DNA of 63,964 bases, counting the filler, from Bigelowiella natans CCMP2755 (taxonomy: Eukaryota > Protista > Cercozoa): NCBI GenBank assembly GCA_000320545.1. It is 6 parts of 6 records of this genome, joined end to end, with 100 filler letters (N's around TTAATTAATTAA, not from the genome) between each part and the next. Parts side by side here need not be neighbours in the genome. Positions count along the whole stretch, not along the records: positions 15,278 to 34,708 come from ADNK01002761.1; 5 more parts are not named here. One strand, given 5' to 3'. The notes below the pieces were generated by a model. That model saw only the letters and a program-made list of their open reading frames with translations. It ran no database searches and had not been told where the DNA came from. The position numbers and the translations under genes are program-made. Numbering within the stretch: position 1 is the stretch's first letter; each line of letters opens with the position of its first letter. Below are positions 15,278 through 34,708 of this stretch, one piece after another.

Positions 15278-16014
15278 CGTTTGCTTCCTTTCGAAGAGTT
15301 GTGTTTATTTTTATTAAAGGTTAATATTTTTATTAAAATCGTGCAACGCGTAATCATTGGCGAAGCTTTCGCGAATGCCACCGCACGTGGGGCAGCACAC
15401 TTCCGGTGTGCTGCCATGAGTCCCGCCCGGAACCCACGTGCCTATGCTGTATTAATATCTACGTTATCTATATTCTATATCCCGCGCCCACTTCTCCCTT
15501 GTTGTCGCACGTGACCCCCCTCTCCCCGTAGTGGTACGCGCTACAGTCAGCACACCGGAGTGTGCTGCCCCACGTGCGGCGGCCACGGCACAAGTGTGCC
15601 ACGAACAAATGAATGAGTGCACGATTCAATGAACACAATGTTCAACGAATTGTTCAACTGTCCAAAAGGAAACAAACGTGTCCCCCCCCTTTGAGCACTT
15701 GGCGCCAACCTTGAGCACTCACCTGCAACCCCACGCGCAACATCCAAATCCCAAGTTCCATCGCAAACTGCAGGAAAAGGCGTTGAAAGTCCACACTTGT
15801 CAATGAGCGAAGTGTGAATGCCAATGCTTGACCACTTCTCCAACGACCACGAACGCCAGGACGCTCCAGCGCTGTCCAGCTGTGCACGAAAGCGTTCACC
15901 ACATCACAGCAAAGTTTGTGATGCACGATGGACGTGCAATGTGACACGTGCATGCCACACGTTGCTGTGTCTGTCGTGTGTCGTTGCGGACGTTTGCATC
16001 GCTGTTTGCACACG

Positions 16015-16619
16015 TGTGGTCAGTTTGCGACCACCAAGTGCATGCAAGCGCGCATGTGCATGCACAGTGCAAATGGTGGTGCATGCTGTGCTTTGTTGTG
16101 TCTCACGTTTGCATGTGAGCACGTTCACGTGGGTTCAGGCTGTCGTTCCTGCACCTCAGTTGGTCACGTGGGGGCACGCAACGTGCATGCCCGGAAACGT
16201 GGTCACAGGAGGGGGGCATGCAACTGGGAACACCCTTCTCGGTTGTTTCCCCAACCGTGGATGTTCCTAGGAGCACCCTCGGTGTTTTGCTTGCGACATG
16301 GAGTCGGCCTGCGTGTCACGACGTTGCAGGGGAAAGTGGCCTGCGTTTTCCCTGACGTTTTGGGCAACTGCTGCTGCGTGGCGTGTTGCTGCTGGGGATG
16401 CTGTGTGTCCAGCACACGACGTGCATTGGCGCGCAACGCGCTGGTTTGGCACACTCTGAAAGACCCGCAAGCAAGCGGCAAGCTTTCTTCTTTGGTGGCA
16501 CGCTCACGCATGCTCACGTCACGTCGTCTGTTCAACAGGGTTTCAGTTTTGTGGGTTCAAAGCATTGTCAAAGCACACATTGCACAGTTGTGTTGTCAGC
16601 GCTGCGCAATGCAACTGCA
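16015..16619 (+). repeat. 5' LTR (605 bp)
   Basis: Aligns end to end with 22268-22877; begins TGTGGTCAG, ends ACTGCA. Confidence 0.95.
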
Positions 16620-16620
16620 C

Positions 16621-16635
16621 TGGTGGCGGACGAAC
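16621..16635 (+). promoter_or_regulatory. Putative primer binding site (TGGTGGCG..., possibly TGGTAGCG tRNA-iMet-type before mutation)
   Basis: TGG one base after the LTR end. The tRNA assignment is inference. Confidence 0.55.
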
Positions 16636-19600
16636 TGCGTCAAGTGGAAAATCGAGGGAACTCGTTTGGGGCTCAGGGGGAGCCCAGAAACCATGCAGAG
16701 GAAGCTGAGAGCAAGGAATCCAAGATTGAAAATCCGGAAGTTTCGACGGGTGGCCATGCGTCACGGGAAGGCATCCCAGTGGCTCAACCCGTGACTTCCA
16801 GACGTTTGAATGAGCTTGGATCGGGCGCCCGGCACTCCCTGACGGTGGATGAGGTTCTGGAGCAGTTTGGTGACCTGACTGTTTCAGCAGGCCGACGAGT
16901 TGCAAAGTGTGTTTTGCACTGCGACGGCATTGATGAAGGTGTGTCTGGTTTGGTCAGAACGATGACCACTGACTTGGAATCGCGAGAGTTCGCATTTCAT
17001 CGTTGCTTGGATGAGGGAACAACTTTGCGAACTTGGGCCTGCACGATGAAGAAATGCAGAGACCCAGGTTGTGCTCCGCCAGGCATGGTGGACAGGATGG
17101 AGCGGAAGGCCAAGCTGCAGCCTTCGGTCCGAGACATTGCGGGTGCCATCGACTCGTTTCGACGGCACTGCCCTGTCAAAGGCAAGCTGTGTGTGGCTGC
17201 CATGAGCCCGGCACAGTTCCGTGGGAGTGCTCGTGGGCTTCACAATGGAATTGAAGCACACGCTGCTTTGGTCGGCCAAGCCGACTTGGGGTTCGGTTGC
17301 AAGTGTTTCCAGACGTGTTTGTCCTCTCACACGCTTGAGAGGCTCCGTCGGGAGGCCACAAGGAATGCACATGCTTCTGAGAGCCCAGAGACCCAGTTTG
17401 AGATGGCTCTGCAGCACCTCTGCGATGAGGAGGACGAAGAGAAGCTTCAGCGCGACTTCGAGGATGAGCTCGATTTCCTTCGGCGAAAGCGGTGTCGACG
17501 TGTTGATGCGATGCACCGGCAGTTCAGCGAGCTTCTTCTGGAGTTTGCTGGACTTCGTTTTGGGCATGCCAACAAGTTGCGGCACTTCCGGCGCTTGTTG
17601 GTGGGTCACCAGTTGCACGACAAGTTCATCGCGCCACTCAACGGATTTGCGCCGTGTGACGTCGATGGACTTGTTGAGTTTTTGCGGCCACTGGAGGAGA
17701 GCCATTGTGAACTTGCGGCTCATCCTCCACACGCTGATGCATCCACAGTTGCAGGACCTGCGGTGCAACGCGAATGCGTGCACTTTTCCAAACGTGGGAA
17801 GTGCAATCACGGTGATGAGTGCAAACTTTTGCACGTCAAGCAAAGTTCTGCAAGTGAGCAGAACGAGCAGAAATCTGAGCAGTGCACCAAGGAGCAGCTT
17901 GATGAAGTGAAAAATCAAGACTGTGGGCTTCGTTTGAAAGGTGAATGCCATCGTGGGGACAAGTGCAAGTTCCGCCATGGTGCTGGGAGTCTCAATGCTG
18001 CTGGAGGGGCGAATGCCAATTTGGCCTCTCACACCTGTGAGGAATCGGCGGATGCTCCAAGGCAAAGTGTGGAGGCATCGCTGCTGCAGGTCAACTCCCA
18101 GTCACTTCCCAAGTTGACAAAGGAAAGTGAGCGTCGTCACTGTGAACGAGACCCAAGTTTGAGGTCTCAGAAGAAAGCAAAGTGCTTTCTGCAGGCGGAT
18201 GACGGCGCTGTTGCAGTGCTTGGGTCAATCGACGATGGCGCTCAACCTGCTGCCATTTCAGAGGCTCCGTGCCAAAAGTTGAAGTCCTCTGGTGTCAGGT
18301 TTGGATGCAGGCCGATGGTGGGTGAGGTGGGTGGGCTCAATTCATCGATTGAGAATGAAACTTTGCGGGAAGTCGATTTTGCGGTCCAGATCAAAAAGTG
18401 CAAAAAGCATGGAGCGCGTGTTGAACTCCGAACTTGTGCTCTGGCAATGTCTGGACCGGTCTCGCAGGACTTTGCATTGGGCACAGGTGCCCTCAACACA
18501 AATGGCATCAATTCTGTCAAGGATCCTGACCCAGCAAAGCGAATTGTCACCATCGATGGTGAAATCGTCAATTTGCATCCGTGCAGCGTCGACGTGCTTT
18601 CGGCGACTGTTGTGACCGTCGTGGGCATGGACATGCCTCCGATGGCAGCTGCTCCCGGCGAGATTTGCAGCATGGATGCCAACGCCGTGGGAGAATTGCC
18701 TGGAGTGGAGGAGGTGTCGTCTGCAGTTCGAAAAGAACTGCAAAGTGCCGTGGATCATGACTTTGCAAGTGATCATGACCACACGATCAATGCACAAGGT
18801 TTGCCTGATGTCGACATCAAATCGATGGCAAGTCCCATCGAATCGGATGGAGTGCTTCTCCAGCGATCATCCAGCATTGCACCGTTGTCAGAGTTTGGCG
18901 ACCAACGTGCAGTCGCTGACTCTGACTTGGCAAACGGCCACGTGCTGGACATGCTTGATCGCTTGGAGAACGAGGTGGTGACGAAGGAGAGCTTGTTGCC
19001 GGGTTCACAGCAATTCCATCACCTTCGCACTGTCACTTGCCGCTTCCGGAAGTGTTTTGTTGTGAAACTGCCGGAGGTGGGAAAGTGTGAGCTGCGGGAA
19101 CCGCACGATGTCAAGCGATGGCTGAAGCCGGGCTGCAAGCCGGTTCGCCAGCGGCCTTGCCACTTGGAGCCGAACAAACTTGAGCTCACGAAGCTCAAGC
19201 TCGACCAAGTGGTGAGCGATGGGTTGTGTTGCAAGGTGACAAGTGACACATCTGAGTGGGCGTCGCCAGCTTTTTGTGTGTGCGATGAAGGAAACGCATC
19301 ACCACGCGTCGTGGTGGCGATGGGTCGCTCAAACAAGCTCGTCGAGCTCACGTGTGCTGTTTGCCCTGTGACTCGGGATGCAGTGAGAAAATTGATGAGT
19401 GCTCAATGGGTGACAGTCTCTGACAGCAAAGCTGCATGGAGACAGCTTGGGATGACTGAGTGCACGAAAGTGGTGTTCGCATTTGTCACTCCATTCGCGT
19501 CGTTTGCAAGCGACGGCTTGCCGATGGGGCACAAGAACGCTCCTCAAGTTTGGGTCGAGGAGGTGGCCACAAGGTTCCTCGTTGGGACACCAGGTGCTGT

Positions 19601-21110
19601 CGTGCACTTCGACGACTTCTTTGCCATTGGACAGTCGCCGATGCAAGCGCTTGTGGGTTTTGCCAAACTTGTGCAACAGTGCGAAAAGTGCAATGATCAT
19701 CGAAGTGCCACCAAATTGCACACTTTTCCCAAGCGACTTGCAGCAGCAGGTTTGATGAAGGAAGCGAAGACTCACTGTCCAGATCCCAAGCGCACGGTTG
19801 CCATGGACAAGCTGGAGCGACCAACAAAAGGGAGGCGGTTCTCAAAGCACGTGCGCCGTCTTGTTGGTTTGTTCGTTCATTGTTTGGAATGCACGAAAGG
19901 CTTCTGGCAAATCGCTGCGCCGATGAAGGATTTGCTCATGCAAGGAGCGGCACAAGTGTGGACAGCGAAGCACGATGAAGCTTTGGATGCATTGAAAGGC
20001 ATGCCAAAGAAGGCGGTGTTGCACGTGCCTGATTGTGAAGCTGCACCCATGAGCCAGCCATTTGTTCTTGACACTGACGCGTCTGATGTGGCTGGAGGTG
20101 CTGCGCTTTCCCAGGTCATTGGTGGGAGCGAACGCCTGCTGGCTTGTTGCTCGTTTGCATGGAAGACAAACGAGAGGAGCTGGCACATTGCACGAAAGGA
20201 GCTTGCGGCTGGAGCGAAGGGGCTTCACCGGTTCCAGCACGTCACTGAAGGCTGCCCAATTTCAATTCGCATGGATGCGAAAACGGCGCGGCATTTCGCG
20301 CTGCACGGAATGGATGAAGTGCAGCTGCCGTGTGCAAGGTTGAGCGCAGCACACTCTGGATGTCCGTTGGTGGACATCCAACATGGAAAGGGGGAAAAGC
20401 ACACCAATGTGGACCCTTTCTCGCGGCCGAATGCTGACGAAACTCGCGACGAAAGGAAGTCGCATCGTCAGTCGCTGGCCTCTCTTTTCCCGTCACGTGC
20501 GGAGGCGGCGAAGCAAGAGGAAAAGCTGGTGAAGTCTGAAGCTTGCCTCTCCTCTTGCTCAGCCAATGAGACGATGATTGACTTCGATGTCCCTCATCTC
20601 TCTGTTCATTCTGTGGAGTTGCAGACTTGGGCGTGCTGTGCCACAGAGGTCCAGGTGTCGACGACGCTGTCTGATGTCACTTTGGAGCAGCAGCGTCCCG
20701 ATTTTGAGAAAATCATCGATGCTCTCGAGGACGAGAAGAATGTCAATCATCTTCTCGTTTCCTCTGAATGCAAAATGGCTCCTGGTGAGCTGTGCCACAT
20801 GGGCTCCTTCCAGATTGGAGGAGGTGCACCGCTGCAACTCTGTGCACCTTCTGATGAACGCCAGGAGGTGTTGCAGGCGTGTCACGTGGACAATGTGGCG
20901 AATCATCGCAACGCTGATGATCTCGCAAAGAAGGTTCTGCGCGGCCATTGCTGGGTTGGAGTCCAGAAAGCCTGCCGTGGATTTGCAAGGCAGTGTCAGT
21001 CTGCACACGTGCCAAAACGCGCACGAAGCAGCGCCTTGCTTGCAGCATGGCGACCGGGAAATTGGTGGCACGATTGCAGTGGATGCAATCGGCCCTGTCG
21101 ACGGCGCTGA
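16621..21110 (+). pseudogene. Gag-Pol polyprotein (CCCH fingers, aspartic protease, RT, RNase H, integrase Zn finger), Tyr-free
   Basis: IDDGAQ (PR). WASPAF, FAFVTPF, LPMGHKNAP, VVHFDDFF (RT). FVLDTDASDVAGGAALSQ, KELAA, HTNVDPFSR (RH). The computed ORF start at 16383 lies inside the LTR and is an artefact of stop-codon loss. Confidence 0.92.
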
Positions 21111-21720
21111 GCACCACACGCAGACGCTGTGCGTTGTGGCCATTGGTTGCGTTTGCACCAGGGCAGTGAAGCGCACGAGCTCGGCGCGCACGGCGGAATT
21201 CATCACGTCGCACACGTCAAAACACGGATGCCCTGAGCAGGTCATCATCGACCAAGGGCCAGAGAACGTGGGCAAAATTGTGCAGCACTTGCAAAATCGG
21301 CTGCGGCTCAAGTTCATCAAGGTGTCTGCTGAAAATGGCCAGGGAAACTCAGCATCAGAGCGGAAGCATCGACCTGTCAATGATGGGATCATGGCGATGC
21401 TCCTGCAAAACGTTGAGGATCGGCACAACTGGCACAAACGTTTGGAGGTGACAACACTCAGTGTGAATGCCACAATCGATGAGTGTGGTCATTCACCGGC
21501 TCACCTCACGTTCGGATGTCAGCCGAAGTTCGTGGCTGATGTGGAGAGCAAGTCGGTGGCGGCTCCAGGGACCGGGGACCTCGATGAGAGGATCCAAGAT
21601 CTGGAAAAAATGCGGCTGCTGTGTGCCACTCTGAAGGAAGATTGCAAATTGGTGAAAAACTTCACGAGAAACGAGAAGCTCAATGCTCAAGACGAACGTG
21701 AAGTGGGGGATGTGGTGTGA
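21000..21720 (+). pseudogene. Integrase catalytic core (DDE), frameshifted relative to pol
   Basis: IAVDAIGP, HGCPEQVIIDQGPENVG, GNSASERKHR and GHSPAHLTFG in ORF 20578-21720; frame change near 21000-21060. Confidence 0.88.
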
Positions 21721-22251
21721 CTTTTCCGCAAGGAAAATCGCAAAGAAAATGCTGTCACGAAAAAACACGAAATCAAAAAGACTGGCCCTGTGACTGTCGT
21801 GGCCAGGAGCAGCAAATCCCATGCCCATCAAATCATTGACCCGAGGACGGGGCACGATGATGATGTGCACGCGAAACACCTTTCGCCTCATGGTGCACTT
21901 GCCCCGTTGCCAGAAGTGCGCCCGGTGGCTCCAGACATTGAGGATGATTTTGCTGGCAAGGATGATGAGGATGCTGATGGTTCCTCCAGCTCGTCGGACT
22001 CCCAGGGGCCTTCTGGTGACCGGATTTCGCGGGACAACACTGTCCAAGGTGAACGCAATGGGAGACCAACCAATGTTGGTCCGCACGTTTCTTGGATTTT
22101 GTGTTTTCGCAAACACGTGCTGCCACACGAATGAATTGGTGGCGGTGCAGTTGGTGCAAAAATTTTTTTTCTTCCCTTTTTTTCCAATTTTCTTTCAGCA
22201 CGCGTGATCCCACTCGTGTGTTGTCATCATTGAGTTGGGGGTGCAAAAGTT

Positions 22252-22267
22252 GGGGGGGGGGGGGCAG
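22252..22267 (+). promoter_or_regulatory. Polypurine tract
   Basis: G13-CAG immediately before the 3' LTR. Confidence 0.8.
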
Positions 22268-22877
22268 TGTGGTCAGTTTGCGACCACCAAATGCATGCAA
22301 GCGCGCATGTGCATGCACAGTGCAAATGGCAGTGCATGCTGTGCTTCATTGCACCTTGCATTTGCATGTGAGCATGTTTGCATGGGTTCAGGCCATCGTT
22401 CCTGCACCTCAGTTGGTCACACAGGGGCATGCAACGTGAGTTGCATGCCCGGAAACACGGTCACAGGAGGGGGGCATGCAACTGGGAACATCCTTCTCGG
22501 TCATTTCCCCAACCGTGGGTGTTCCTAGGAGCACCCTCGGTGTTTCACTTGCGACATGGAGTCGGCCTGCGCATTGTGATGTCATGGGGGAAAGTGGCCC
22601 ACGTTTTCCCCAATGTTTTGGGCAACTGCTGCTGCGCAGCACGTTGCTGCTGGGGATGCTGTGTGTCCAGCACACGATGTGCATTGGCGCGCAACGCGCT
22701 GGTTTGGCATGCTCCAAAAGACCCGCAAGCAAGCGGCAAGCTTTCTTCTTTGGTGGCATGCTCATGCATGCTCACATCGTGTCATCTGTTCAACAGGCTT
22801 TTGGTTTTGTGGATTTGAAGCATTGTCAAAGCACACATTGCACAGTTGTGTTGTCAGCGCTGCGCAACACAACCACA
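22268..22877 (+). repeat. 3' LTR (610 bp)
   Basis: Matches the 5' LTR with one 5-bp insertion; ends ACCACA followed by TSD ACACG. Confidence 0.95.
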
Positions 22878-23679
22878 ACACGTCGTGCCCTGAACTTGCA
22901 CTCCCATCAAGGTTCAGTTTCATCAGGTGTCGTGCTTGGAGAAGCAGCCCTCGATTGTGTCCACGCTTTTCGCGTGCATTTCACGTTTTGTGTTTCCAAT
23001 GCATGGCCATGCTTTTGCAGCTGAGCCACGACAGCTAGACACCCTCCATGCAACGCAACTGATCAGGTGCAAGTGACAAGCACGCGTGCTCAGTCGTGCG
23101 AGCCCGAGCCCTCGCCAGCTCGACTGCACGTTGATGACGCACGCTGTGGCTGCAGGGTGCAGCAAGCAAACACCCCTGCTAGCCTGGCTAGCTGGACGCG
23201 TGGTCCATGTGACCCAGTGAGTGTGGTGGTCGCACCACGTGCTGCGATGTCGCACAACAACAGACGAACAAGCAACCGTTTGTCCATTTGACCACTCAGC
23301 CATCACGGCGTTGCATGTGCTTTTCCCCATGCCAGCATGACTCAGCAGGCTTGCTAGCTTGCACCTCTGTGTCTGCACGTCAAGTCGTGTTGCATGCACC
23401 ACATGGCGTCCAGAAGCCCAATTTGCAAATTGGTTGGCACACAATGGGAGGGAGGAACATGCGAGCATGCCAGCATGGCAACACTTGGACACTTGCGCTG
23501 TGCATGCACACACGTGTGCATGTGCATGTGCACACATTTGACATGTGCTGTTGCTTGGTCTACAATGAGTTGCTCTCAATGGACACGTGACATCACACAT
23601 GCACAATGCATGCTGTTGCTTGGTCCACAATCATTTGATGTTCGACTTGCAGCATGCCATGCACGACGACAACAACATT

Positions 23680-26600
23680 TCAGCGTTGCTGGCTTGACGG
23701 CACAAAACCTCCGTGAAACGAATGTGGCACGTGATGCTCCAGCTCAACTTCAGCCAAGGAATTGCCTTGAATGTCTTTCGCATCCAGAATCACAAGCTGA
23801 GATGAATGAATGAGATGCGGTGTCATGTGATGGTCTGCATAACCTCTTCCCCCTACAAGCCCCGTTTGGCAACATCATCATCTCTAGATGTTCACTAAGA
23901 TTCTAGTCTGGACCTTCGATTTGTGAGTCATTGAGTCGTACACATACGTCAGCACGTAGCCATCATCCTGAAAGAAGAGATTTCGTGACAGATGGAAAAA
24001 AAGTGCAGAAATTTGGAATGATTTGATCACTAAACAATGTGAGACTCCAATCTTCACAACACCAACAAATCAACTAATAATCTGAAATGTCGATTCCCCC
24101 CCCCCCCCCCCCCCCCCCCCCCCAAGTGGTTCTACTGAATCAACGCTCACCTCCTCGTTTGAGTTCTCTCGAGCCGCAAACACAGGCTCCCCTGAAAATT
24201 TTCATAGAAGTAAAATAAAATGAAGATTTTTAGATAATGATATCCAGGAAGATGAACCCATCCCGAATTCTCTCAAGCTCCCGTGTGTCGCGTTTATCCA
24301 TGGATTAAGATAACGGAAAAGAAGAAAAATTAGGGCTACGAATCTCCACCGACCAGCATATTTCGTTGGACCAAAGCCTCTGATTGTATGAATTCCCGTT
24401 TTCATGTCGATCTTTCCGATTGCGTTGAGAAACCCTGGAGTTGCTCCATTTGGGAGGACTTCCAGCGCATTGACAAATGCGAATCTAATGGAAATTTGAA
24501 GACACAAGCGATGTCAAGAAAACCAGAGGAAAACACGCAGGAGATAAAGAGAGATTGGAGAGAGGAGAGCGGTTTGTAGAACCTTGATTCTCTCGCTGTA
24601 TATGCCTGGTTAATCGTAGGCAATTCACATAGAAGCGGGGAAGATTTCCCGAGTCTTCATGTTGATTTCGGTAGAAGGAGTTGTGGGAGAGACATCCAAC
24701 TCTATTTCATGCAGTGTGGGCAGCGTTCTCTCGCTGAATCTTGCATTGTACATATCGAAACGGTTTGCTTCCATCTCTTCGCGGCTGCCCTCCTTGTGGA
24801 TCAGAAGCTGGACCTGAAAGAAGAAAATTACGAACGAGCGAAAAGATCGGCGCAGAAAGTATCCATTCATCAGAGATAATACCCTATCATCATCGTAACA
24901 TTGTATACACGCAGCTCTTTCATATTTGCGGGCATCTCAACCTTTATAGTACTCTTCTGTCCTTGGCTCCCCCCCTCCTGGTGCGCGTTAACCATGTGAT
25001 CAAATGACAGGGCTGGAACCTTCGCATCTTTTCGCACGCTCATATCTTTCTTATCAATGACGATGACCCTGGCGTCAGAGACGCCCCCGCCCCCCCCTCC
25101 TTGCCACCGGAATTCCCTTCCTAGAGAGTTTAACCCAAGCCCAGCTGTGAGCACCTTGGAGATGGGGCACACATACGGGTGGAGAATGAAGACGAGAAAG
25201 TCTTCGGTGCTGGCGAAATCGTGGATAAAAGCCAATTCCTCGAGGCTGATATCAGTGGTTCCTACCACACCCTGAGACTCTTGGACCTTGTACACGCGCA
25301 ATTTCATCGGGTAGCCTTTTTACGATGAAGGGAGGGGGAGGGGAGGGGGGGGGGGTAAGGAAATGGACAAGGAGGAGACGTAGGAAGAGGAGAAGGAAGA
25401 AGGGACTAAATTCGCATTATCGAAACGCATTCACTAGCAAGATTCTCAAGATTTCTTTCCCGGAAAACCTTGTACTAGTACATCTGCTTGCGATCCTACT
25501 GATACTATCTAAATCTGGTGCTCCTACCGAGCACAAGGCCGTGATTGAACATGATCTTATCGTCTGCCCTCGATCTAAACGTGTCCACCTGTGCGAAATC
25601 ATTGGACGATCAAAATTACGAGGAGTAATCAAATAAGGATGGCGTATTAATGATTCAATGGGAAGGAATCGGTCAGCTTCAACGATGACAGTAATTATAG
25701 GAGGGACCTGTGGATGCGCCGAGAAGAAGGCCCCTTTGTTCAGGCCTTTGATTGCGTATTCACCAACCGTGTGCAGCGTCTTTGGATCGATATCCATCGG
25801 CGGCCCGCCTTCGTGCATTAGGCAAAAGGAATATTACATCACTAATTGCAACCAGCGACAACTCCCTCTCTCCCTTCTCCTGATTATCGAGCTGCTCAAC
25901 GAAGTATTGTACCCTCGCAGAGCGCAAGAAGTCGTCCATTCCAGTCGATTGTAGCTGTGTTCCCGGGATTCGTAGGGTTCCGGCCGAGATTTTGTGGGAC
26001 CTTCGGCAAATGTGAGTACAGGGGTTAAGCGAGGAGGAGCTCCTTCTCAATGCAACACAAAGAACACATATCCTTTATGACTAGTACATCTTCTTACCCC
26101 CCCCGCACGCTGAGTCCACGCACCACGTAGCTGAAACCCTGCATCGTCTGACACAGACGATTGAGCATTGAATCGTTCCGTCCTAACGTATCGCCCTGTG
26201 AAGGTTGCGCGGTTAAGTTTCCCATCTAATTCCATGCGGGTGATGTAGCCGTCGCCATCGAACCAGTGACCGTATTTGTGCTCACCAACCTAAGAGCAAG
26301 TGGTTGTGTTGGTAGATGTTTCAAGGTTACACATGGATGGAAAAAGAAGGAGGAGATGATGAAGAGGGGTGGGGGGCACATAATGCCATTATAGTACCCA
26401 GACTATGGACAATCATGATAATAATAATAATCATGATAACAGCCTACCCGAACACGTCCCGCGCCATTTCGGTACAGCACGCCCTTCATGTCGCTTGGGA
26501 TTTCCCCCACTACTCGCGGTTGATACTCTTCGATGTCTCCAGCAGGCTCTAGCCCGCCTTCCATATTTTTTATTTGACAGTTTTAAGTTTACGGGGGGGA

Positions 26601-27300
26601 GACAGACAGTTCCACTGAAGAACTAACTACAAATTGGCCAAGGGAAAACAACGTTAGTGGTGAAAGCTCTGGGGGTTGCACCATACCTCTCCACGGGGCT
26701 TGCTGAATTCGAGAGAGAATAGAGGGTGGTGGTCTAAATTTCATATCCAAAGAGGGGTTTGACCCAAAAAGACGCGGAGGATGCCGTGGTAGCTTGCGTT
26801 GGGGGGGGGTGGGTGGGCAGGGACTTATCTTAGTGAATAACGCCTGTCTTGCTGCTACAATGACAAGAATTATTACATTACGAAAACCTGGAACTAGTTG
26901 AAAATATCAAAACTTATTATCTTCAGCAGTACCTACTGCGAAGTGATATCCTAATCAAGTCTCATTTAAATTCGAACGAACCTCAACGGGCGAAGAAGAC
27001 GTATGCGGAGGCTTCAGGCAACGTCGTCTCTTTTCCATGGAAGATAAGCGATTGCCGCCCATCGCAATGCTGTTTCGGAAAATCCTGTGTCTCGCTGCTA
27101 GCTCGTTTATATTTACTCTTGACCGGGCATACGACGAAGATGCATCGCCTGGCAAAAAGGGTTGAGCGTACGAGCGAGCGACAAAGTGAGGAGGGGGAGG
27201 AGGAGGAGGAAATACAAGCAGGACCTTTGATGCTTGAAGCGAGGCTCGATAGGATCCAGACGAAAGCTACACCATTAATTGAATCGCGACAGCCGAGCAT
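23680..27300 (-). CDS. Carotenoid oxygenase (RPE65/CCD family), multi-exon; start approximate
   Basis: Exons read GEIPSDMKGVLYRNGAG, HWFDGDG, FFSAHP, FIHDFASTE, FEMPTIN, DDGYVLTYVYD and LVILDA...HHVPHSFHG; stop at 23680-23682. Confidence 0.9.
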
Positions 27301-27781
27301 TATGCGGCAACAGAGAGTTGTTGCACGTACCGTTGCCCCCCCCCTCCTTTCTCTAGCCGAGGGCCACTCGTTTGCTTTTTACCACCCCGACGGTCCTCCC
27401 AATCGGCGATTTATTTTACGGCGCCACTCCATATTCCAAGTCGCACCATAAAAGCGAACGAATATCGAGCTAACAATTAAAAAACTTAGGAAATGACCTG
27501 TGAAAATCCGTTGTGACAGCATAATTTGCCCATTTTTTTTTATATTTAGAAACAGTTTTAATTTTGGAGTAAAATCCCAGCTTGAACGCAGCCCTTCACA
27601 CACGATAACGCCTTCATACGACCGTTAAGGGAGGGGGGAGAAAGTCTCCATTGGGACTTCCACGCCGCAGCTTCTAGACTGCGCCGATTCTAGGAAACAT
27701 CTCCTGGATCCAGATAGACATTTGGTCTATCCAACCCACCCACCCACCCACCCTATTCCACCTCTTTCTTTGGTGTCGACC

Positions 27782-30636
27782 ATGCACGTCAAAGCTCAGT
27801 GGAGGTTCCAAGGACAGACGGAAAAGGACTTGTAAGAAGAAGAAATAGAAGATCTCTGCCTCTGATTGAACTAACATTGCTTAAAGAAGAACCACCTTCT
27901 GCCGAAGATTGCCCTTTATTCCTTACATTTCATTAGGGTTCTTGAGGAGGGGGACATTGTCAATGTTTTGACACAAAAAGACTCGAAGGAGTCTTGGTGG
28001 GAAGGTAACGATTAGCCAGAGTATTTTCGATGTGGGATGGTGCTACTGCCCAACTTCCCCCCTATAATTGTTATGGTTATTCATATTAGGACGTAATCTG
28101 AGGACGGGCCGTGTTGGGTTTTTCCCTGCAAACTACACGGTTGAATGCTCCCAGAAGGTGCAATCGTCGTCTGAAACTATTACAGCCTGCACTCCTCTCC
28201 TTGTGAGTAAGTGCTACATATCTAAGATCGTTTGGTTGCGGTGCTGAATACTATTAGGAAATCGAATCGTTCCTGCATCGTCCGAAGGAAATGCAAGCAG
28301 CAGCTTCCATCCATCAATCAAACTTTCAAAGGGAATCAATTAGCAGCCGTACAGGGCGTGAACCGAGGACAACACGGAGAATGAGCGGAATAGTATCACC
28401 GAAACTGAGGGATATCATCAGTAAGCGCAACGCTGTTGTGTTGGAAATTATGTGATTCATTCCGGGAAATTTACTGATCAGGGAGTCCCCAGAAAAGCAC
28501 GATGATGACAAAATTTTCGCTCGATTTTGAAGCTGCGGCCAAGTATAAGGTCCAATCGCGTATCATTATCAATTATCTTCACCATCACATTCACTGTATT
28601 GCCACTGCCACCGCTCCCCATGTTAGCACAAGTATTGTATTTGAGATTGCTCTTGGCCTGTGCGGTGCTGCCTCTATTTCTGAGTCTAATACTTGGCCTC
28701 CTTGCATTGTAGTATATTAAATGCCTGGGGAAAGGGTCGTTCTCCACGGTGCACTTAGGTTTGTAGATTTCATAATGATATGGTTGTCCAAGTATTCCTC
28801 ATGTGGCCCTTGACATTGTTGTGCAAATGCAGCCAAACTGAGGAGAGATGCTAAGACTGATGGTCGAAGTCCCAGAAGTCCTAAGGTGGTGATCTCACAC
28901 GCGCCGCGCAGTATACAAGTTCCAAGAAAACAGCGGCACGCATGGCTTCAGTATCATCCATGCGAAGCTCGATAAACAAAACGCTAAATCTGTTTATTTT
29001 CCTCTTTCCAACCAAGGCGGATGACTACGTGTGCATTAAGTCAATACCGGCGAAGTCGTTAGCGGAACTGAACATGGCCCTCCAGGAGGCTATGATGCTG
29101 TGCAACACTGGAACTTCAAAGGTCGTCTCCCTGCTCTGCGTCTTCATCACACACCTCTTACCTCCCCCCCCCCCTCTTACTTCCTATATTTTCCTGATTT
29201 GCATGGCGTTCCATCAACATCTTGCCATAGGGTGTGATCGATATCATGGACGCGTTTATGGAGTGTAAAGGTACTAAGAGAGAGGGAGAGAGAGAGAGAA
29301 AGAAGGGAAGCGGGTTGAAGAATGGAATAAGAATTGCCGGCTTGATTGGTGCGCGATACGAATTGAATGAACGCGCCCCCCTCCCGTCTTCGTCTTGTTA
29401 GGCTGCGGCAGCGGTATGGCCTTGAGTGAAATGACGGGGCCTGTTTCCTTTTGCATTGTGACCGAGTAAGCAGAGACCGCCTCATTAACAACTCCAAACC
29501 AATACTCGTCGCATGCACTCGGGGATAATTCAATAAATGCCAACGGGATCTTCGTTTTTTGCTTTGAGTAGATACTGTGCTGGTGGCACTCTAAAGGACC
29601 GCATTGAGAGGAGGAAGGGACGGAAAGAGGTGCGAAGAAGAATGCCAGCAAAGATGTTTGGTCAGATACGATAGTACCCTTCGCCCTTGAAGCGTTGTTT
29701 CCTGTTATAAATGGACATTGGTTCTCATCATCACCATCACCACTACCACCATCATCATCATCATCATTATCATTACCACAGGGAGGCTTTCCGGAATATG
29801 AGACAATTCAGATCATATATGATGTAGCAACGGTACTCATTAACCATTTGGAGGAGTCTGATGTGTTTTGCTACTGCATTGCATTGTTTGAGTCATCGGC
29901 CCGAAGACTAATAAATTCTGCCTGTTCGTGCATCTGGTGTCCTATCATTCCAGAGCGTGGCAGATATTCATCGGTTGAACATCCTGCATCGCGATCTAAA
30001 ACCTTCGAATGTCTTCTTGACGAGGTCCGAAAATGGCAACGAATTTTTCTTGAATTCTAACTCTCCCCCTCCCCCCTCGCCCCCGCTACATCAAAAGCGA
30101 CGGTGAGATACGAATAGGTGACTTTGGAATTGCAAAGACGCTTTTAAGACAATCCAACACTAGCACTTTTGTGGGGTAAAAATTGTCGGATCTTCATTAC
30201 TCTTTATTATTAAGAATATATTTAGCAGTGGGGGGGGCGATAATAAATAAGTTGTTTATTCACGTACATTAATAATGGCAGGACTACTGGGTACATAGCT
30301 CCAGAAGTGCGAAATATGAAACCGTATGTTTCAGAAATAGATATAACAACTTAGATCATAGAGCAAACAACACACATTCTGAGAGGCATCGTATCCTTAC
30401 TTCTTATCCCTTTTTTTGGGATGTTTTCCCGAAAATAGTGGACTAGTTTGTGCCGTTCCTTCGCTCCGTTTGCGAGTGGATGAGTGAATGTACAAACATC
30501 TACGCGCCAATGCATACCTAACTTCCCCATTCCATCACCGACTACAGGTACGATTACAAGTGCGACATGTGGTCAGTTGGCGTCATCATGCTGGAACTGC
30601 TAACTCTATCAACTTATATGCAGTCTGAGGTAGAGA

Positions 30637-30682
<46 letters not shown>

Positions 30683-32415
30683 GAAGGGTGAGGGCGGGGG
30701 GGGATTAACAACTGTAATAATAGCAGCAGGAGGATATATGTAGATTTTTAGTGGTAGACCTATCATCTCTATTTCCTTGGAAATAACGATTTCTACATTG
30801 TCGTTCTACTGACCGTTGTAAAATCTATGGTGTGTAGGAGTTACAGAGACTAGAGAAGCGTATTAGCGCGTCTGCAATGACGATTCTCCTCGGGCTGCTT
30901 TCGCCTAACCCAAGTAAGATCATCGCCACATAGCGAGCAAACTCTACTGTTTACTTGTTCTACACTGCCTCTTCGAGAGAATATTTATGATGATAATGAC
31001 GATGGTGGTGGTGGTGGTGGTGACATCAAGTGTACGTAAGCTACACGAGTAGAGACATCGCTTGGTTTTTGTTCTCATCTCTCTCCTTTGCCCCCATTGC
31101 AGAGCAGCGTCCCTCCGCAAATAGAATCGCCAAATACATCTGGAAGCACTATCCGATCAAGTTAGTGGGGGGGGGGGGGGGGGGAGGGGTGCATAGACAT
31201 GCTCTCTGATCAGAACCCATGCTTGCGAGGAAGAAGAGGACTTAGCGACCGATGATTTTCTCACAGGCTCAGCTTTCGAATCAACAAGATAATGAGAGCC
31301 ATTGGGACGGTGAGACGACATCAACGCCCTTCGCCCAGATTACATGCTAATAGTAGCTCGCTCATGCCCCAGTGCTTCGCAGGGGGGGTATATATGTGTG
31401 ACTTTTTGATTGTTTGGCTGCTCGCTGCTGCTGCTGCTGCTGCTTTTGCTGTGAACACTGCTGAACAGAACTCCGAGGGGCTGATCACAGCGGACATTCT
31501 CTGCGGATTCCTTAGTAAGATGAGGCAGTTTTCGGGGAGAGTTGGAAAGGTAAGCTAGCAGCAGCACTGGAACACTGACACTTTTCAAAGAACGAATCTG
31601 GAGTAGCCAGTAATCAGCAAAATCTCGGTTTTTAATTGGAATCATCAGTGTTCAAAGATAAGCAGAGAAACATAGCGGAGAAGAAGTACATGTTGTGCCA
31701 CGTCACCCATGGCGTTCATTTATTTATTTTTCCCCCCAATAATCGGTATTCATTCTTCGTCGATTGTTTGTGTACAGTACATCGAGAAAACACCACAACA
31801 AGAAGCTAGAAGCTTGGTAGATTCTTTCTCCGCCAACCACTTCCACCCCCCCCCCTCTAGAGGAGAAACGTTTTCGTCTGCGTATGTTTCTTAACCTCCC
31901 GACTAATTTATCCCTCTGCACTGTTTTCCCGTTTTATCATTATTCCAGGTTGATTCCCTGGGGAGGGGCAGAAACGGGATATCAGCGCAGAAGGTGAACA
32001 GCATGTGATCTAACATTTCTGCTTCGTCTTGATTTTGCTCCTAAACGAATACAGTTTACGAAGTTTCTCGGGGACTACTACAGGCGCCATCCTCTGAAGC
32101 TTGCGTAATAATGATGTTGGTGCTGATGATTCTCTTGACAATTAATGTTACATGGATATCCAACCTCGATAGACGTCTAACTATTCTCTTTCGTTGGAAA
32201 TCACAAGGTTGATGGAGCAGTGTCTTAACAGCAGTGCCTCGCCGAAAACAGGGTTCAGCAGCGTGAGGACAGCCATAAATCCCGAGCAGCCTAATGTACG
32301 TGCATCAGCGCCATCGGAGTTTGTCAACTCTGCCCAGGTTCTCAAAGACGAGAAAAAAGCCACGGTGAGAGCGACAGCCATCACGCATTCTGCGCGATCT
32401 GCTCCAAGTATGTAG
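27782..32415 (+). CDS. SH3 domain-containing Ser/Thr protein kinase (NEK-like), multi-exon
   Basis: SH3: EEGDIVNVL..SWWEG..VGFFPANY. Kinase: LGKGSFSTV, HRDLKPSNVFL, IGDFGIAK, GTTGYIAPE, DMWSVG. Confidence 0.88.
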
Positions 32416-33382
32416 GCTTCTAGCGGGATTCGCGTCTGGAGCTGCGTACAAGGCCACTTTATCAATATTGTAATCATGTCTAGCCGTCTCTATGTGTATC
32501 GAGTTAAGTGTTATTATCAGAACTGATCGAACTTGCACAAAACTGCAAGTGATAGTTCGTGGAGCTGGTATATCCACAATGATGCTGTACGTGCTAGTGT
32601 GTCACCACCCGCGCCATGGCTGCGGCAGGTTGATCGCAGCAGACCATCTAATTATGCACACACATTCGTACGCATCAAGAGATCTGCGTATTAGCTCTTG
32701 TAGATCTAGTAGATATATGTCCCCGCGCAATGATGAAAGACGTGCACGTGGTACATGTCGGCACAAACACACATGCACACTACTAGCTACACAGCTAGAC
32801 AGCTATGGCTAGCTAGCGCACCTATCTAACTACATGTAGTTGTAGGTACGTTGCACCACACAAGCGTCACTGTGCATGTAAATCATGTAGGGATTGTTAA
32901 AAATGGGCTAGACATGATTCTGTGCTGACATACGCGTGCACATCCAACGTACCCGTCTAGTCGTCGCTGTCTTATATATACACTCTAGTACTGTCTAGCT
33001 GTGTGCAAGCGCATGTGCTAGTGTGCTGCACTCTGTATCGCTACGGTCCCGTCTTCAACGATCTAGCGATGCGCTGTACACATGTTTATGTGCAACATAC
33101 TATATATAAGCATGTAGCGCCTACGACGCTACGCTAGCTAGCTAGCTAGTTAGTACGGCCGATGCGCACGTCGATCTATAGCCATTTCATTCGATTCATC
33201 TAGCTATGCTTTAGTAGTCAATAATTTACAACTAGAGCTAGACAACTGCATGCATAGTGCTCCACGATACATGCAACAAAAGGCAATCCCTGCACGCTCT
33301 ATCTTGTTGGATGGTGCACATATTATTGAGATAAAGCGTAGATTCTCTCATCCCCCCCCCCCCCCCCCCTCCCGCCAAGGAA

Positions 33383-33481
33383 ACACAACACAATCCGCTT
33401 TTGTAGCAAGCGACAAGCAGCACCTCAACACCAAGATATTCACCGATAACAAGCATATATTATTCTTATATCATCCTTCTT

Positions 33482-33515
<34 letters not shown>

Positions 33516-34341
33516 CGTCGTCGGCATCACCGGTTGCTGGGCAAGATTTGGATAAGCCTCCAAGATAGCATACTTCATCGCCTCCCTTTCCTGTGAGCCA
33601 GGAAGCATATATCAGCGACATGCCAGTACTGCTACTACTTCTATTGAGCCAACTTTTCCTTCTTCTTCTTCTTCTTTTCTTCTTGTTCTGTTAGTTAATG
33701 TTAGTTAATGACGATCACCATAGGATTGCACATAATGTTCAAGCTGCTCCCGGTGACCCACCCCGCGACAACGAAGTGCTCCCTAGTAAAAAGCAACATG
33801 CACGCGGAGACGACGTAACACGACAAAGAACACTCAAAACAATGTCTTAATGTTGTATTTTCCAGAGGAAGATGGGCTTGCATCGGGCAGGTGTGTGAGC
33901 GGCGTCTGGGCCGAAGCGGCTACTTGTTATATCTTTGGAATCATCATCGTCGATCAGGCGTTGGGCATTCTCCGTGAGTGACAGTGCACGATGATGATGA
34001 TGATGGTGATGATGGTGGTGTGCATGGGTACTGTTGTAGCATTACTCTGAGACTTTGCGATCAGGGTCGTCGAGAACAATGGCGCATCTGATGGTGGGTA
34101 ATAGTTAGAGAATTTTATCCCATAATTACAAGTGACACACGCATATACGAGTGCAAAAGGAAGAGAAGGAACAGCAAGTGCGCGGGGTTCCACTGAGGAC
34201 GCTCCTATGACTCGGCGATGATTGAGAAACATCTTATTTTTGGAGATACGACTAACGGAAATACACCTACCCTCCTTTGTCTAACTTTTGCGCCTGTTCT
34301 TTCAACGATTCATCCATGACCGCAAACTGGTGATAAATGTG

Positions 34342-34378
<37 letters not shown>

Positions 34379-34673
34379 CTATACATTAGCACACATACAA
34401 AAATACATGTATTGTACATGATCTCATGCGGCAATAGTGACGCATTCTCCATCGTTTCCCCCCTCAAAACCCCCCTCCCTCCCCCAACGAATCTGGGATT
34501 ATCAAAGAGTTCCGCTGTCTCGCGGAATGAGTAGCGTCCATCATGGGCATATTCACGATAACAGCTACTACGAGATTTTTCTCTGCCATAGAGCTACAAA
34601 CCATCAATCTTTGTAACTGTACACAAGCTATTACCTTCCAGGACGTGACTTTGAAAAACGTCAGGAACTGCAC
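33383..34673 (-). CDS. Hypothetical multi-exon protein, partial
   Basis: Short protein-like exons separated by microsatellite-containing introns; truncated by the gap. Confidence 0.3.
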
Positions 34674-34708
34674 GGCACTTGCTTTCAGAGTTTGCTTTGA
34701 GAGGAATG

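What the first reader, a model, noticed from the sequence alone, without database searches (positions are those of the whole stretch)
16015..22877. LTR pair records the mutation directly: reciprocal TG/CA at the same positions, acquired after integration
LTRs are identical at insertion. My manual alignment gives about 69 substitutions in 605 bp, of which only one is a transversion, plus one 5-bp indel. About 22 sites are double differences, TG in one LTR and CA in the other (16077/22330, 16610/22868, 16616/22874). That is what an ancestral TA resolved independently on either strand would give. With an intact TSD and one transversion, the element looks young but is ~11% diverged. Independent outcomes in the two LTRs argue for mutation of chromosomal DNA rather than editing of the RNA intermediate.
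Basis: seen in the sequence. Interest (0 to 1): 0.93.

Follow-up and report, generated by a model that had tools for sequence, protein, structure and literature searches.

The report
TpA-erasing hypermutation of a retrotransposon
A retrotransposon copy in the alga Bigelowiella natans has had almost every TA step rewritten to TG or CA after its two end repeats had formed, which independently confirms, for transposons, an unusual A:T-to-G:C mutation process first reported for this alga in a 2026 preprint.

Summary
The LTRs 16015-16619 and 22268-22877 differ at 69 of 606 aligned sites: 68 transitions, 1 transversion and one 5-bp indel. Twenty-two sites are reciprocal TG/CA, and the 5-bp target-site duplication ACACG is intact.

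Eleven near-identical copies elsewhere in the genome carry TA at 19 of the 22 reciprocal sites and CG at none. Those copies have 514 TA and one open 1812-codon gag-pol frame; this copy has 2 TA and no Tyr codon (73 in the unmutated copies). Distant outgroup proteins side with the TA-bearing copies 64:5.

The genome is Bigelowiella natans. A 2026 preprint showed by mutation accumulation that integrated viral DNA in this alga mutates TpA to TpG/CpA about 1000 times faster than background. This locus is therefore a new, saturated target of a known process.

New points:
- TG and CA outcomes are interspersed without strand runs.
- ApT is a weaker second target.
- Borders are sharp at one copy and graded at others.
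- Near-identical copies are untouched.
- Environmental relatives may show the same signature.

The enzyme is unknown. DNA adenine deamination is inferred, not shown.

The parts
15543..16009 (.). TA-free left flank. The last TA is at 15542. It includes an old inverted copy of a high-copy ~350-bp repeat at 15546-15745.
16010..16014 (+). Target-site duplication ACACG, left copy
16015..16619 (+). 5' LTR (605 bp, TG...CA). One TA is left, against 52 in the near-identical copies.
16266..16271 (.). CCTAGG, the only TA kept in the 5' LTR. The same site is kept in 6 of 17 mutated LTR copies.
16621..16635 (+). Primer-binding-like site starting TGG, one base after the LTR
   Evidence: read from the sequence; no tRNA match was tested
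16647..22095 (+). Span homologous to the gag-pol frame of the unmutated copies (CCCH zinc fingers, RT, RNase H, integrase). It has no TA and no Tyr codon. The frame is disturbed by a 7-bp insertion near 19505, single-base deletions near 20998 and 21030, and a TGA at 21718.
22245..22267 (+). Polypurine tract with a run of 13 G
22268..22877 (+). 3' LTR (610 bp). One TA is left.
22524..22529 (.). CCTAGG, the only TA kept in the 3' LTR
22878..22882 (+). Target-site duplication ACACG, right copy
22883..23839 (.). TA-poor right flank: 5 TA in about 960 bp (23036, 23180, 23189, 23355, 23561), with TG+CA doubled. The sequence is unique in the genome.

Best explanation

After its two LTRs had formed, and most likely after integration, a process that turns the A:T pair of TpA steps into G:C acted on it. 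Each TA became TG or CA, depending on which strand was hit, and a converted site is no longer a target. The process ran to saturation: 514 TA fell to 2. It acted site by site, with both strands used about equally and no strand runs, so the two LTRs took different outcomes at about 40% of sites. A weaker activity on ApT steps then produced the CG-versus-TG/CA single differences.

This is the TpA hypermutation measured directly by mutation accumulation in integrated viral DNA of the same species (bioRxiv 10.64898/2026.01.13.699255).

Shown here: the polarity, the context, the strand symmetry, the saturation, and independence between LTRs and between copies.

Inferred: the chemistry is enzymatic deamination of adenine to hypoxanthine in DNA, fixed over many cell generations. 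Targeting follows the state or identity of the element rather than repetition as such.
For: Polarity:
- The near-identical copies carry TA at 19 of the 22 reciprocal sites and CG at none.
- Relative to them, the 5' LTR has 43 A>G and 35 T>C against 8 changes in the opposite direction and 2 transversions.
- Over the whole element, TA became TG 232 times, CA 215, CG 30, and stayed TA 3 times.
- Tyr codons fell from 73 to 0, and outgroup proteins favour the TA-bearing copies 64:5 and 69:4.
- The unmutated copies have one open 1812-codon frame and score higher against the Pfam domains.

Replication: three mutated full-length elements each show 18-19 reciprocal and 23-30 concordant outcomes at about 51 LTR sites. 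Three unmutated pairs keep 49-51 of 49-52 TA.

TG and CA outcomes show no clustering along the element: runs-test z = 0.6.

Speed: the C234 pair has 0 differences at 419 non-target sites, yet has lost all but 2 of its 104 LTR TA sites.

Second target: copy-specific transitions run at 6.9% of ApT sites, against 1.7% at other A/T sites and 1.4% at G/C sites.

Organism: a JGI Bigelowiella natans gene model maps at 100% identity to this assembly.

Published rates: 231 of 302 new mutations fell in two integrated viral regions, and nearly all were A>G or T>C at TpA. From the preprint's numbers I calculate about 1.1e-5 per TpA per generation. That would erase 99.4% of TA in about 5e5 generations, far less than the time needed for one ordinary LTR difference.
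Against: - No new mutation was seen at the five remaining TAs of the right flank in three sequenced lines. The test is weak, with few sites and only contig consensus.
- At the C234 copy the mutated zone ends within 20 bp of the left LTR edge and within about 70 bp of the right edge, with the duplication ACCAC intact. Editing of the unintegrated DNA copy would predict exactly that.
- Ten or more near-identical copies are untouched: 4 TpA-type changes among 1,542 TA. Either they are very recent or they are exempt.
- No dedicated deaminase stands out. There are six TadA-superfamily loci and one A_deamin gene, which looks like a housekeeping set.
Confidence: 0.85

Rival explanations
1. Ordinary decay of methylated CpG: the ancestor had CG at the reciprocal sites, and each LTR lost it as TG or CA.
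For: It gives the same reciprocal TG/CA picture, and the single differences are CG against TG or CA.
Against: None of the 22 sites is CG in the near-identical copies. The changes run A>G and T>C relative to those copies and to outgroup proteins. The CG singles sit where the unmutated copies have ATG, CAT or TA, so they are products, not ancestors.
Confidence: 0.01
2. Reverse polarity: the TA-rich copies are products of a RIP-like C-to-T process acting on TG and CA, and this copy is close to the original.
For: Classical RIP makes TA from CA and TG (general knowledge; searches list that literature).
Against: The two LTRs of one insertion cannot have begun as TG and CA at the same site. The TA-rich copies are near-identical to each other, hold one open frame, and match outgroups at conserved Tyr positions.
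Confidence: 0.01
3. ADAR-like A-to-I editing of the element's RNA before reverse transcription.
For: A-to-G changes with a 5' U preference are typical of RNA adenosine deaminases (general knowledge; discussed in the preprint).
Against: Both LTRs would be copied from the same edited template and would be identical. Only the sense strand would change, whereas T>C equals A>G here. The preprint also sees the signature arising in integrated DNA viruses during culture.
Confidence: 0.02
4. Deamination of the double-stranded DNA copy before integration, so the mutated zone equals the element.
For: The borders at the C234 copy are sharp on both sides, with an intact duplication. LTR reciprocity is compatible with this model.
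Against: An unintegrated copy does not replicate. One burst would pass top-strand and bottom-strand events to different daughters and give strand-coherent outcomes. Observed outcomes are about 50:50 and interspersed. Unique flanks are TA-poor at this locus, and 8 of 9 flanks of mutated copies have fewer TA close to the element than further out. Solo LTRs are only about 70% mutated. The same signature arises in chromosomal viral inserts.
Confidence: 0.07
5. The same DNA-level process, but the chemistry starts at thymine (modification of T in TpA and misrepair or miscoding to C), not at adenine.
For: The sequence data cannot tell which member of the A:T pair is attacked, because TA is its own complement.
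Against: No TET/JBP-type gene scores above the family cut-off in the genome. TadA-type deaminases intrinsically act on an A preceded by U or T (general knowledge).
Confidence: 0.15

Closest known systems
TpA hypermutation of integrated giant-virus and virophage DNA in Bigelowiella natans (Mettrop et al., bioRxiv 10.64898/2026.01.13.699255, 2026)
   Same: Same species. Almost only A>G and T>C changes, at TpA, on both strands, in foreign DNA. That paper also found TpA-poor gene models enriched in reverse transcriptase and DDE domains.
   Different: The preprint does not mention LTRs or retrotransposon pairs, and it calls transposons only potential targets. Here the target is a Ty3/gypsy family and the process is saturated: 2 of 514 TA are left, against about half remaining in the viral region. 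The polarity is proved by LTR pairs, sibling copies and outgroups. A weaker ApT target, border behaviour and untouched sibling copies are also described here.
Repeat-induced point mutation (RIP) of fungi
   Same: DNA-level, transition-only, dinucleotide-specific mutation that riddles transposon copies, sometimes reaches into flanks, and destroys reading frames.
   Different: RIP turns C into T (CpA to TpA) and enriches AT. This process removes TA and enriches GC. RIP needs duplicated sequence and acts before meiosis. Here ten or more near-identical copies are untouched, and the preprint's main target is single-copy.
APOBEC3 editing of retroviral and retrotransposon cDNA
   Same: Host-driven deaminase-type hypermutation of retroelements, recorded in integrated copies.
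   Different: APOBEC3 edits C on the minus-strand cDNA before integration and gives strand-specific G>A. Here A:T pairs change on both strands equally, differently in the two LTRs.
ADAR or fungal TAD-type A-to-I RNA editing
   Same: An A read as G, with a preference for a preceding U/T.
   Different: Those enzymes act on RNA. Here the record is in double-stranded DNA and differs between LTRs.
CpG decay through 5-methylcytosine deamination
   Same: It produces reciprocal TG/CA between old duplicates.
   Different: Opposite direction: here TG/CA, and then some CG, are products of TA.

Membership tests
Bigelowiella natans TpA hypermutation (Mettrop et al. 2026) | The organism is Bigelowiella natans | tested here: met
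   The JGI Bigna1 model 147227 (P0003) maps at 100% identity to C236 of this assembly. The assembly is 91.4 Mb.
Bigelowiella natans TpA hypermutation (Mettrop et al. 2026) | Almost exclusively A>G and T>C changes | tested here: met
   The 5' LTR has 78 of 88 changes of this type and the 3' LTR 65 of 78, relative to the near-identical copies. Over the whole element the counts are 376 and 359.
Bigelowiella natans TpA hypermutation (Mettrop et al. 2026) | Mutations fall on TpA, giving TpG or CpA | tested here: met
   The A>G frequency is 0.46-0.53 per strand at TAN trinucleotides, against 0.03-0.19 elsewhere. Of the TA sites, 477 of 513 became TG, CA or CG. The additional weaker ApT effect is not in the preprint.
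Bigelowiella natans TpA hypermutation (Mettrop et al. 2026) | Elevated mutation rate observable in culture lines at the locus | tested here: inconclusive
   No change was seen in the unique flank 22844-24080 in three lines. The element itself has no TA left to mutate.
Ty3/gypsy LTR retrotransposon | LTRs ending TG...CA, a 5-bp target duplication, primer-binding and polypurine sites, and domain order RT - RNase H - integrase | tested here: met
   The gag part carries CCCH zinc fingers.
Fungal RIP | C-to-T transitions at CpA (or CpG) in duplicated DNA | tested here: not met
   The direction is A:T to G:C.
Fungal RIP | Repetition is necessary and sufficient for targeting | tested here: not met
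   Near-identical multi-copy elements are unmutated. The preprint's main target is single-copy.
CpG methylation decay | CG as the ancestral state at the variable dinucleotides | tested here: not met
   None of the 22 sites is CG in the sibling copies.
Pre-integration editing (APOBEC- or ADAR-like) | Strand-specific changes, identical in both LTRs | tested here: not met
   232 TG against 215 CA, and 22 reciprocal LTR sites.

The most novel reading that the evidence does not exclude
Bigelowiella, and perhaps related marine protists, may run a genome defence that is the chemical mirror of RIP. In this reading, a natural deaminase acts on adenine in double-stranded chromosomal DNA at TpA, and weakly at ApT. 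It would be directed to particular integrated elements by their chromatin or RNA state rather than by repetition. It can stop within tens of bases of an element's edge and erases every TA within about 10^5-10^6 generations. With the TAs go all Tyr codons, TAA/TAG stops and TATA-like signals. The enzyme would be a natural counterpart of engineered adenine base editors.
Probability: 0.35. Interest if true: 0.9.

Novelty: new member of a known kind. Interest (0 to 1): 0.6.

Why it matters
A directed A:T-to-G:C mutator acting on nuclear DNA is very unusual. Known genome-defence mutators (RIP, APOBEC) attack cytosine. The only report, a 2026 preprint, rests on two viral inserts and calls the transposon link inconclusive.

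This locus and its family supply what that work lacks:
- Polarity is proved by LTR pairs, sibling copies and outgroup proteins.
- Saturation is reached while the ordinary molecular clock has barely ticked.
- Both strands are used equally, site by site.
- There is a second, weaker sequence target (ApT).
- Element-sharp and graded borders both occur.
- Near-identical sibling copies are untouched, which argues against repeat-induced targeting.

There are also practical consequences. LTR divergence cannot be used to date insertions in this genome. TA-free copies also yield long spurious reading frames, some of which have been annotated as genes.

Tried and rejected
- I tried to use the high-copy ~350-bp repeat left of the element as a polarised control for spread into the flank. 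The inverted copy at 15546-15745 is old and full of transversions, so it gave no clean answer.
- Laying three lines' contigs and one raw ChIP run on 22300-28200 showed no change in the unique flank. The LTR part was swamped by cross-mapping from other copies. The one fixed difference downstream (26794 T>C) is not at a TpA.
- The deaminase inventory (six PF00383 loci, one PF02137 gene) showed no expansion or striking fusion. NCBIfam only calls the PF00383 loci TadA-like, below the cut-off.
- TET/JBP gave only a sub-threshold hit.
- Pfam scans of TA-free stretches that do not belong to this family gave one weak retroviral protease hit and nothing else.
- A word-based search for close intact relatives of the environmental contig L065 found nothing.
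Polarity was read from counts at single sites in natural copies.
Full report
**1. The observation**

Only 15278-34708 of the window is real sequence; it equals contig C976 of a 91.4-Mb assembly. A repeat search and a global alignment confirm two direct repeats, 16015-16619 and 22268-22877.

- They differ at 69 of 606 aligned positions: 68 transitions and one transversion (G/C at 16540/22798).
- There is one 5-bp indel.
- The mismatches are strongly paired: 29 adjacent pairs, against at most 19 in 20,000 random placements.
- ACACG flanks the element on both sides. The repeats run TG...CA. A G-rich polypurine tract precedes the 3' repeat, and a TGG-initiated site follows the 5' repeat.

The internal part is homologous to a gag-pol frame with CCCH zinc fingers, reverse transcriptase, RNase H and integrase in Ty3/gypsy order.

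**2. Polarity**

The genome holds more than 45 copies of this LTR. Eleven of them are identical or within about 1% of each other.

- Relative to these eleven, the 5' LTR here carries 43 A>G and 35 T>C, against 8 changes in the opposite direction and 2 transversions. The 3' LTR carries 28 and 37. Other diverged copies show the same spectrum.
- At the 22 reciprocal sites the eleven copies have TA at 19, TG at 2, CA at 1 and CG at none.

Because TA and CG are symmetric end states of a TG/CA intermediate, I looked for evidence that does not depend on copy age.

- Three full-length near-identical copies each have 514 or more TA and one open 1812-codon frame. The window's copy has 2 TA in 6863 bases.
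- Projected codon by codon, the 73 Tyr codons of the unmutated copy are all gone here: Cys 36, His 29, Arg 5.
- Two outgroup proteins of 43% identity, from a Tara Oceans metagenome and a Logan assembly, agree with the TA-bearing copy at 64 differing positions and with this copy at 5. For a second mutated copy the counts are 69 and 4.

The ancestor therefore had TA.

**3. Anatomy of the process**

- Of 513 TA sites, 232 became TG, 215 CA and 30 CG, and 3 stayed TA.
- Per strand, an A preceded by T changed with frequency about 0.5 whatever the next base. This means one hit per TA, after which the site is no longer a target.
- TG and CA outcomes alternate as expected by chance (runs-test z = 0.6 in two copies), and there is no sense/antisense bias.
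- Flanking bases bias the choice of strand by at most about 2:1. This explains why two independent copies agree at 64% rather than 50% of sites.
- The two TA left in the element are the same CCTAGG site in each LTR. That site also survives in 6 of 17 mutated LTR copies.
- A second, weaker target shows up once TA is exhausted. Copy-specific transitions affect 6.9% of ApT positions, against 1.7% of other A/T positions and 1.4% of G/C positions.
- This second target explains the single differences in the LTR pair. They are ATG>ACG or CAT>CGT, or a second hit at a former TA, and almost all lie in the 5' LTR.

**4. Replication and timing**

- Two further mutated full-length elements (on C234 and C2965) show 18 reciprocal and 26-30 concordant outcomes at about 51 LTR sites.
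- Three unmutated pairs keep 49-51 of 49-52 TA.
- At sites that are neither TA nor AT, the C234 pair has 0 differences in 419, and the window's pair has 4 in 408, of which only the transversion is clearly unrelated.
- Two solo LTRs are about 70% mutated, with the surviving TA scattered. Intermediate states therefore exist.
- The three unmutated full-length copies carry only 4 TpA-type changes among 31 private differences.

**5. Borders**

Around the window's element the TA-free zone runs from 15543 to about 23840. That is 470 bp beyond the left LTR and about 960 bp, holding 5 TA, beyond the right LTR.

- The right flank, and the part of the left flank next to the element, have no other copy in the genome.
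- In 8 of 9 outer flanks of mutated copies, the first 300 bp hold fewer TA than 300 bp about 1 kb further out (sign test about 0.04, my calculation).
- Against this, unmutated copies often sit inside older TA-free DNA with knife-sharp borders.
- The mutated C234 copy, with intact duplication ACCAC, has three TA 20-28 bp outside its left LTR and normal density from about 70-170 bp outside its right LTR.

Spread into flanks is therefore likely at this locus but is neither universal nor proven.

**6. Identity of the genome and what is known**

A JGI Bigelowiella natans gene model, itself a Tyr-less mutated pol, maps at 100% identity to this assembly.

A 2026 preprint (bioRxiv 10.64898/2026.01.13.699255) reports a mutation-accumulation experiment in this species:
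- 231 of 302 new point mutations fell in an integrated giant-virus region and a virophage region.
- Nearly all were A>G or T>C, and all of those were at TpA.
- The rate there was about 6e-7 per site per generation, against 3.5e-10 elsewhere, and only some lines were affected.
- TpA-poor gene models were enriched in reverse transcriptase and DDE domains.
- An ADAT2 homologue was proposed as a candidate enzyme.

The preprint does not mention LTRs, retrotransposon pairs or ApT, and it calls the transposon link potential.

From its numbers (211 mutations, 6169 TpA, 3132 generations) I calculate about 1.1e-5 per TpA per generation. That is about 5e5 generations to lose 99.4% of TA, which fits the saturated but otherwise young LTR pairs seen here.

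**7. Mechanism**

Shown: a DNA-level, TpA-specific A:T-to-G:C process acting on both strands after LTR formation.

Inferred as chromosomal and multi-generational, for three reasons:
- An unreplicated DNA copy hit in one burst would hand top-strand and bottom-strand events to different daughters and give strand-coherent outcomes. These are not seen.
- The flanks are affected at several loci.
- The same signature arises in integrated viruses in culture.

Inferred chemistry: deamination of adenine to hypoxanthine.
- The genome has six TadA-superfamily loci and one A_deamin gene, with no obvious specialised member.
- It has no TET/JBP gene above the family cut-off.
- Thymine-directed chemistry is therefore less likely but not excluded.

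Targeting is not repeat-induced in the RIP sense: near-identical multi-copy elements are untouched, and the published main target is single-copy.

**8. Other checks**

Contigs of three culture lines show no change in the unique right flank. This is a weak negative.

**9. A lead beyond this genome**

Among the best 150 library matches to the pol C-terminus, the Tyr-poorest include two proteins from ENA metagenome assemblies.
- Their contigs are absent from the Bigelowiella assembly.
- The contigs have TA observed/expected 0.33-0.37, with TG and CA raised.
- They carry His or Cys at many columns where the intact relatives have Tyr.
- Intact relatives have TA observed/expected 0.65-0.95.
- No close intact sibling was found to polarise them.

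**10. Verdict**

The process is already described in one preprint, so this is a new and unusually clean member of a known kind. It adds mechanistic detail and a direct demonstration that retrotransposons are targets.

Noticed in passing
window 15380-15745: A partial copy of a very abundant repeat of about 350 bp (674 first-look candidates, with copies nearly identical to each other). It is followed by an older inverted copy of the same repeat. The first copy keeps its TAs; the inverted one, which lies nearer the retrotransposon, has none.
   Followed up: partly
window 16266-16271 and 22524-22529: CCTAGG holds the only TA left in each LTR. The same site survives in 6 of 17 mutated LTR copies, far more often than any other site, although CTAG sites elsewhere in the element are mutated.
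   Followed up: partly
G000:C236:58386-61909 (L056): The JGI gene model Bigna1 147227 (P0003, 1151 aa, no Tyr) is a hypermutated pol of this family annotated as a two-exon gene. TA-free copies have no TAA or TAG and so yield long spurious frames on both strands (25 ORFs over 120 aa in this window piece, most of them inside the element).
   Followed up: partly
G000:C3187:1-70000 (L052-L055): Four 10-kb samples of this 229-kb contig have TA observed/expected of only 0.43-0.53. They carry long intronless ORFs (ankyrin repeats, C2H2 fingers with DUF5767, a ResIII helicase, many orphans). This is probably the integrated giant-virus region that the preprint reports as hypermutable (Rho TpA 0.45).
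   Followed up: partly
L064 (ENA ERZ4903317) and L065 (ENA ERZ4903314): Environmental contigs with related pol genes, absent from the Bigelowiella assembly. They are TA-poor (0.33-0.37) and carry His/Cys at conserved Tyr columns. The same TpA loss may act in other marine organisms.
   Followed up: partly
L006, L007, L010, L011, L013 (flanks of near-identical copies): Seven of eleven near-identical copies sit inside TA-free DNA with sharp borders. Part of that DNA is older copies of the same family and part is unidentified; one stretch has a weak retroviral protease hit. New insertions seem to land preferentially in already mutated islands.
   Followed up: partly
G000 contigs C2112, C1679, C584, C550, C676: Other Ty3/gypsy families (31-52% protein identity to this one), several with open frames of 1873 codons.
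   Followed up: no
window 32778-33527: A stretch with TA observed/expected 1.3-1.65, the opposite extreme to the element. It was not examined.
   Followed up: no
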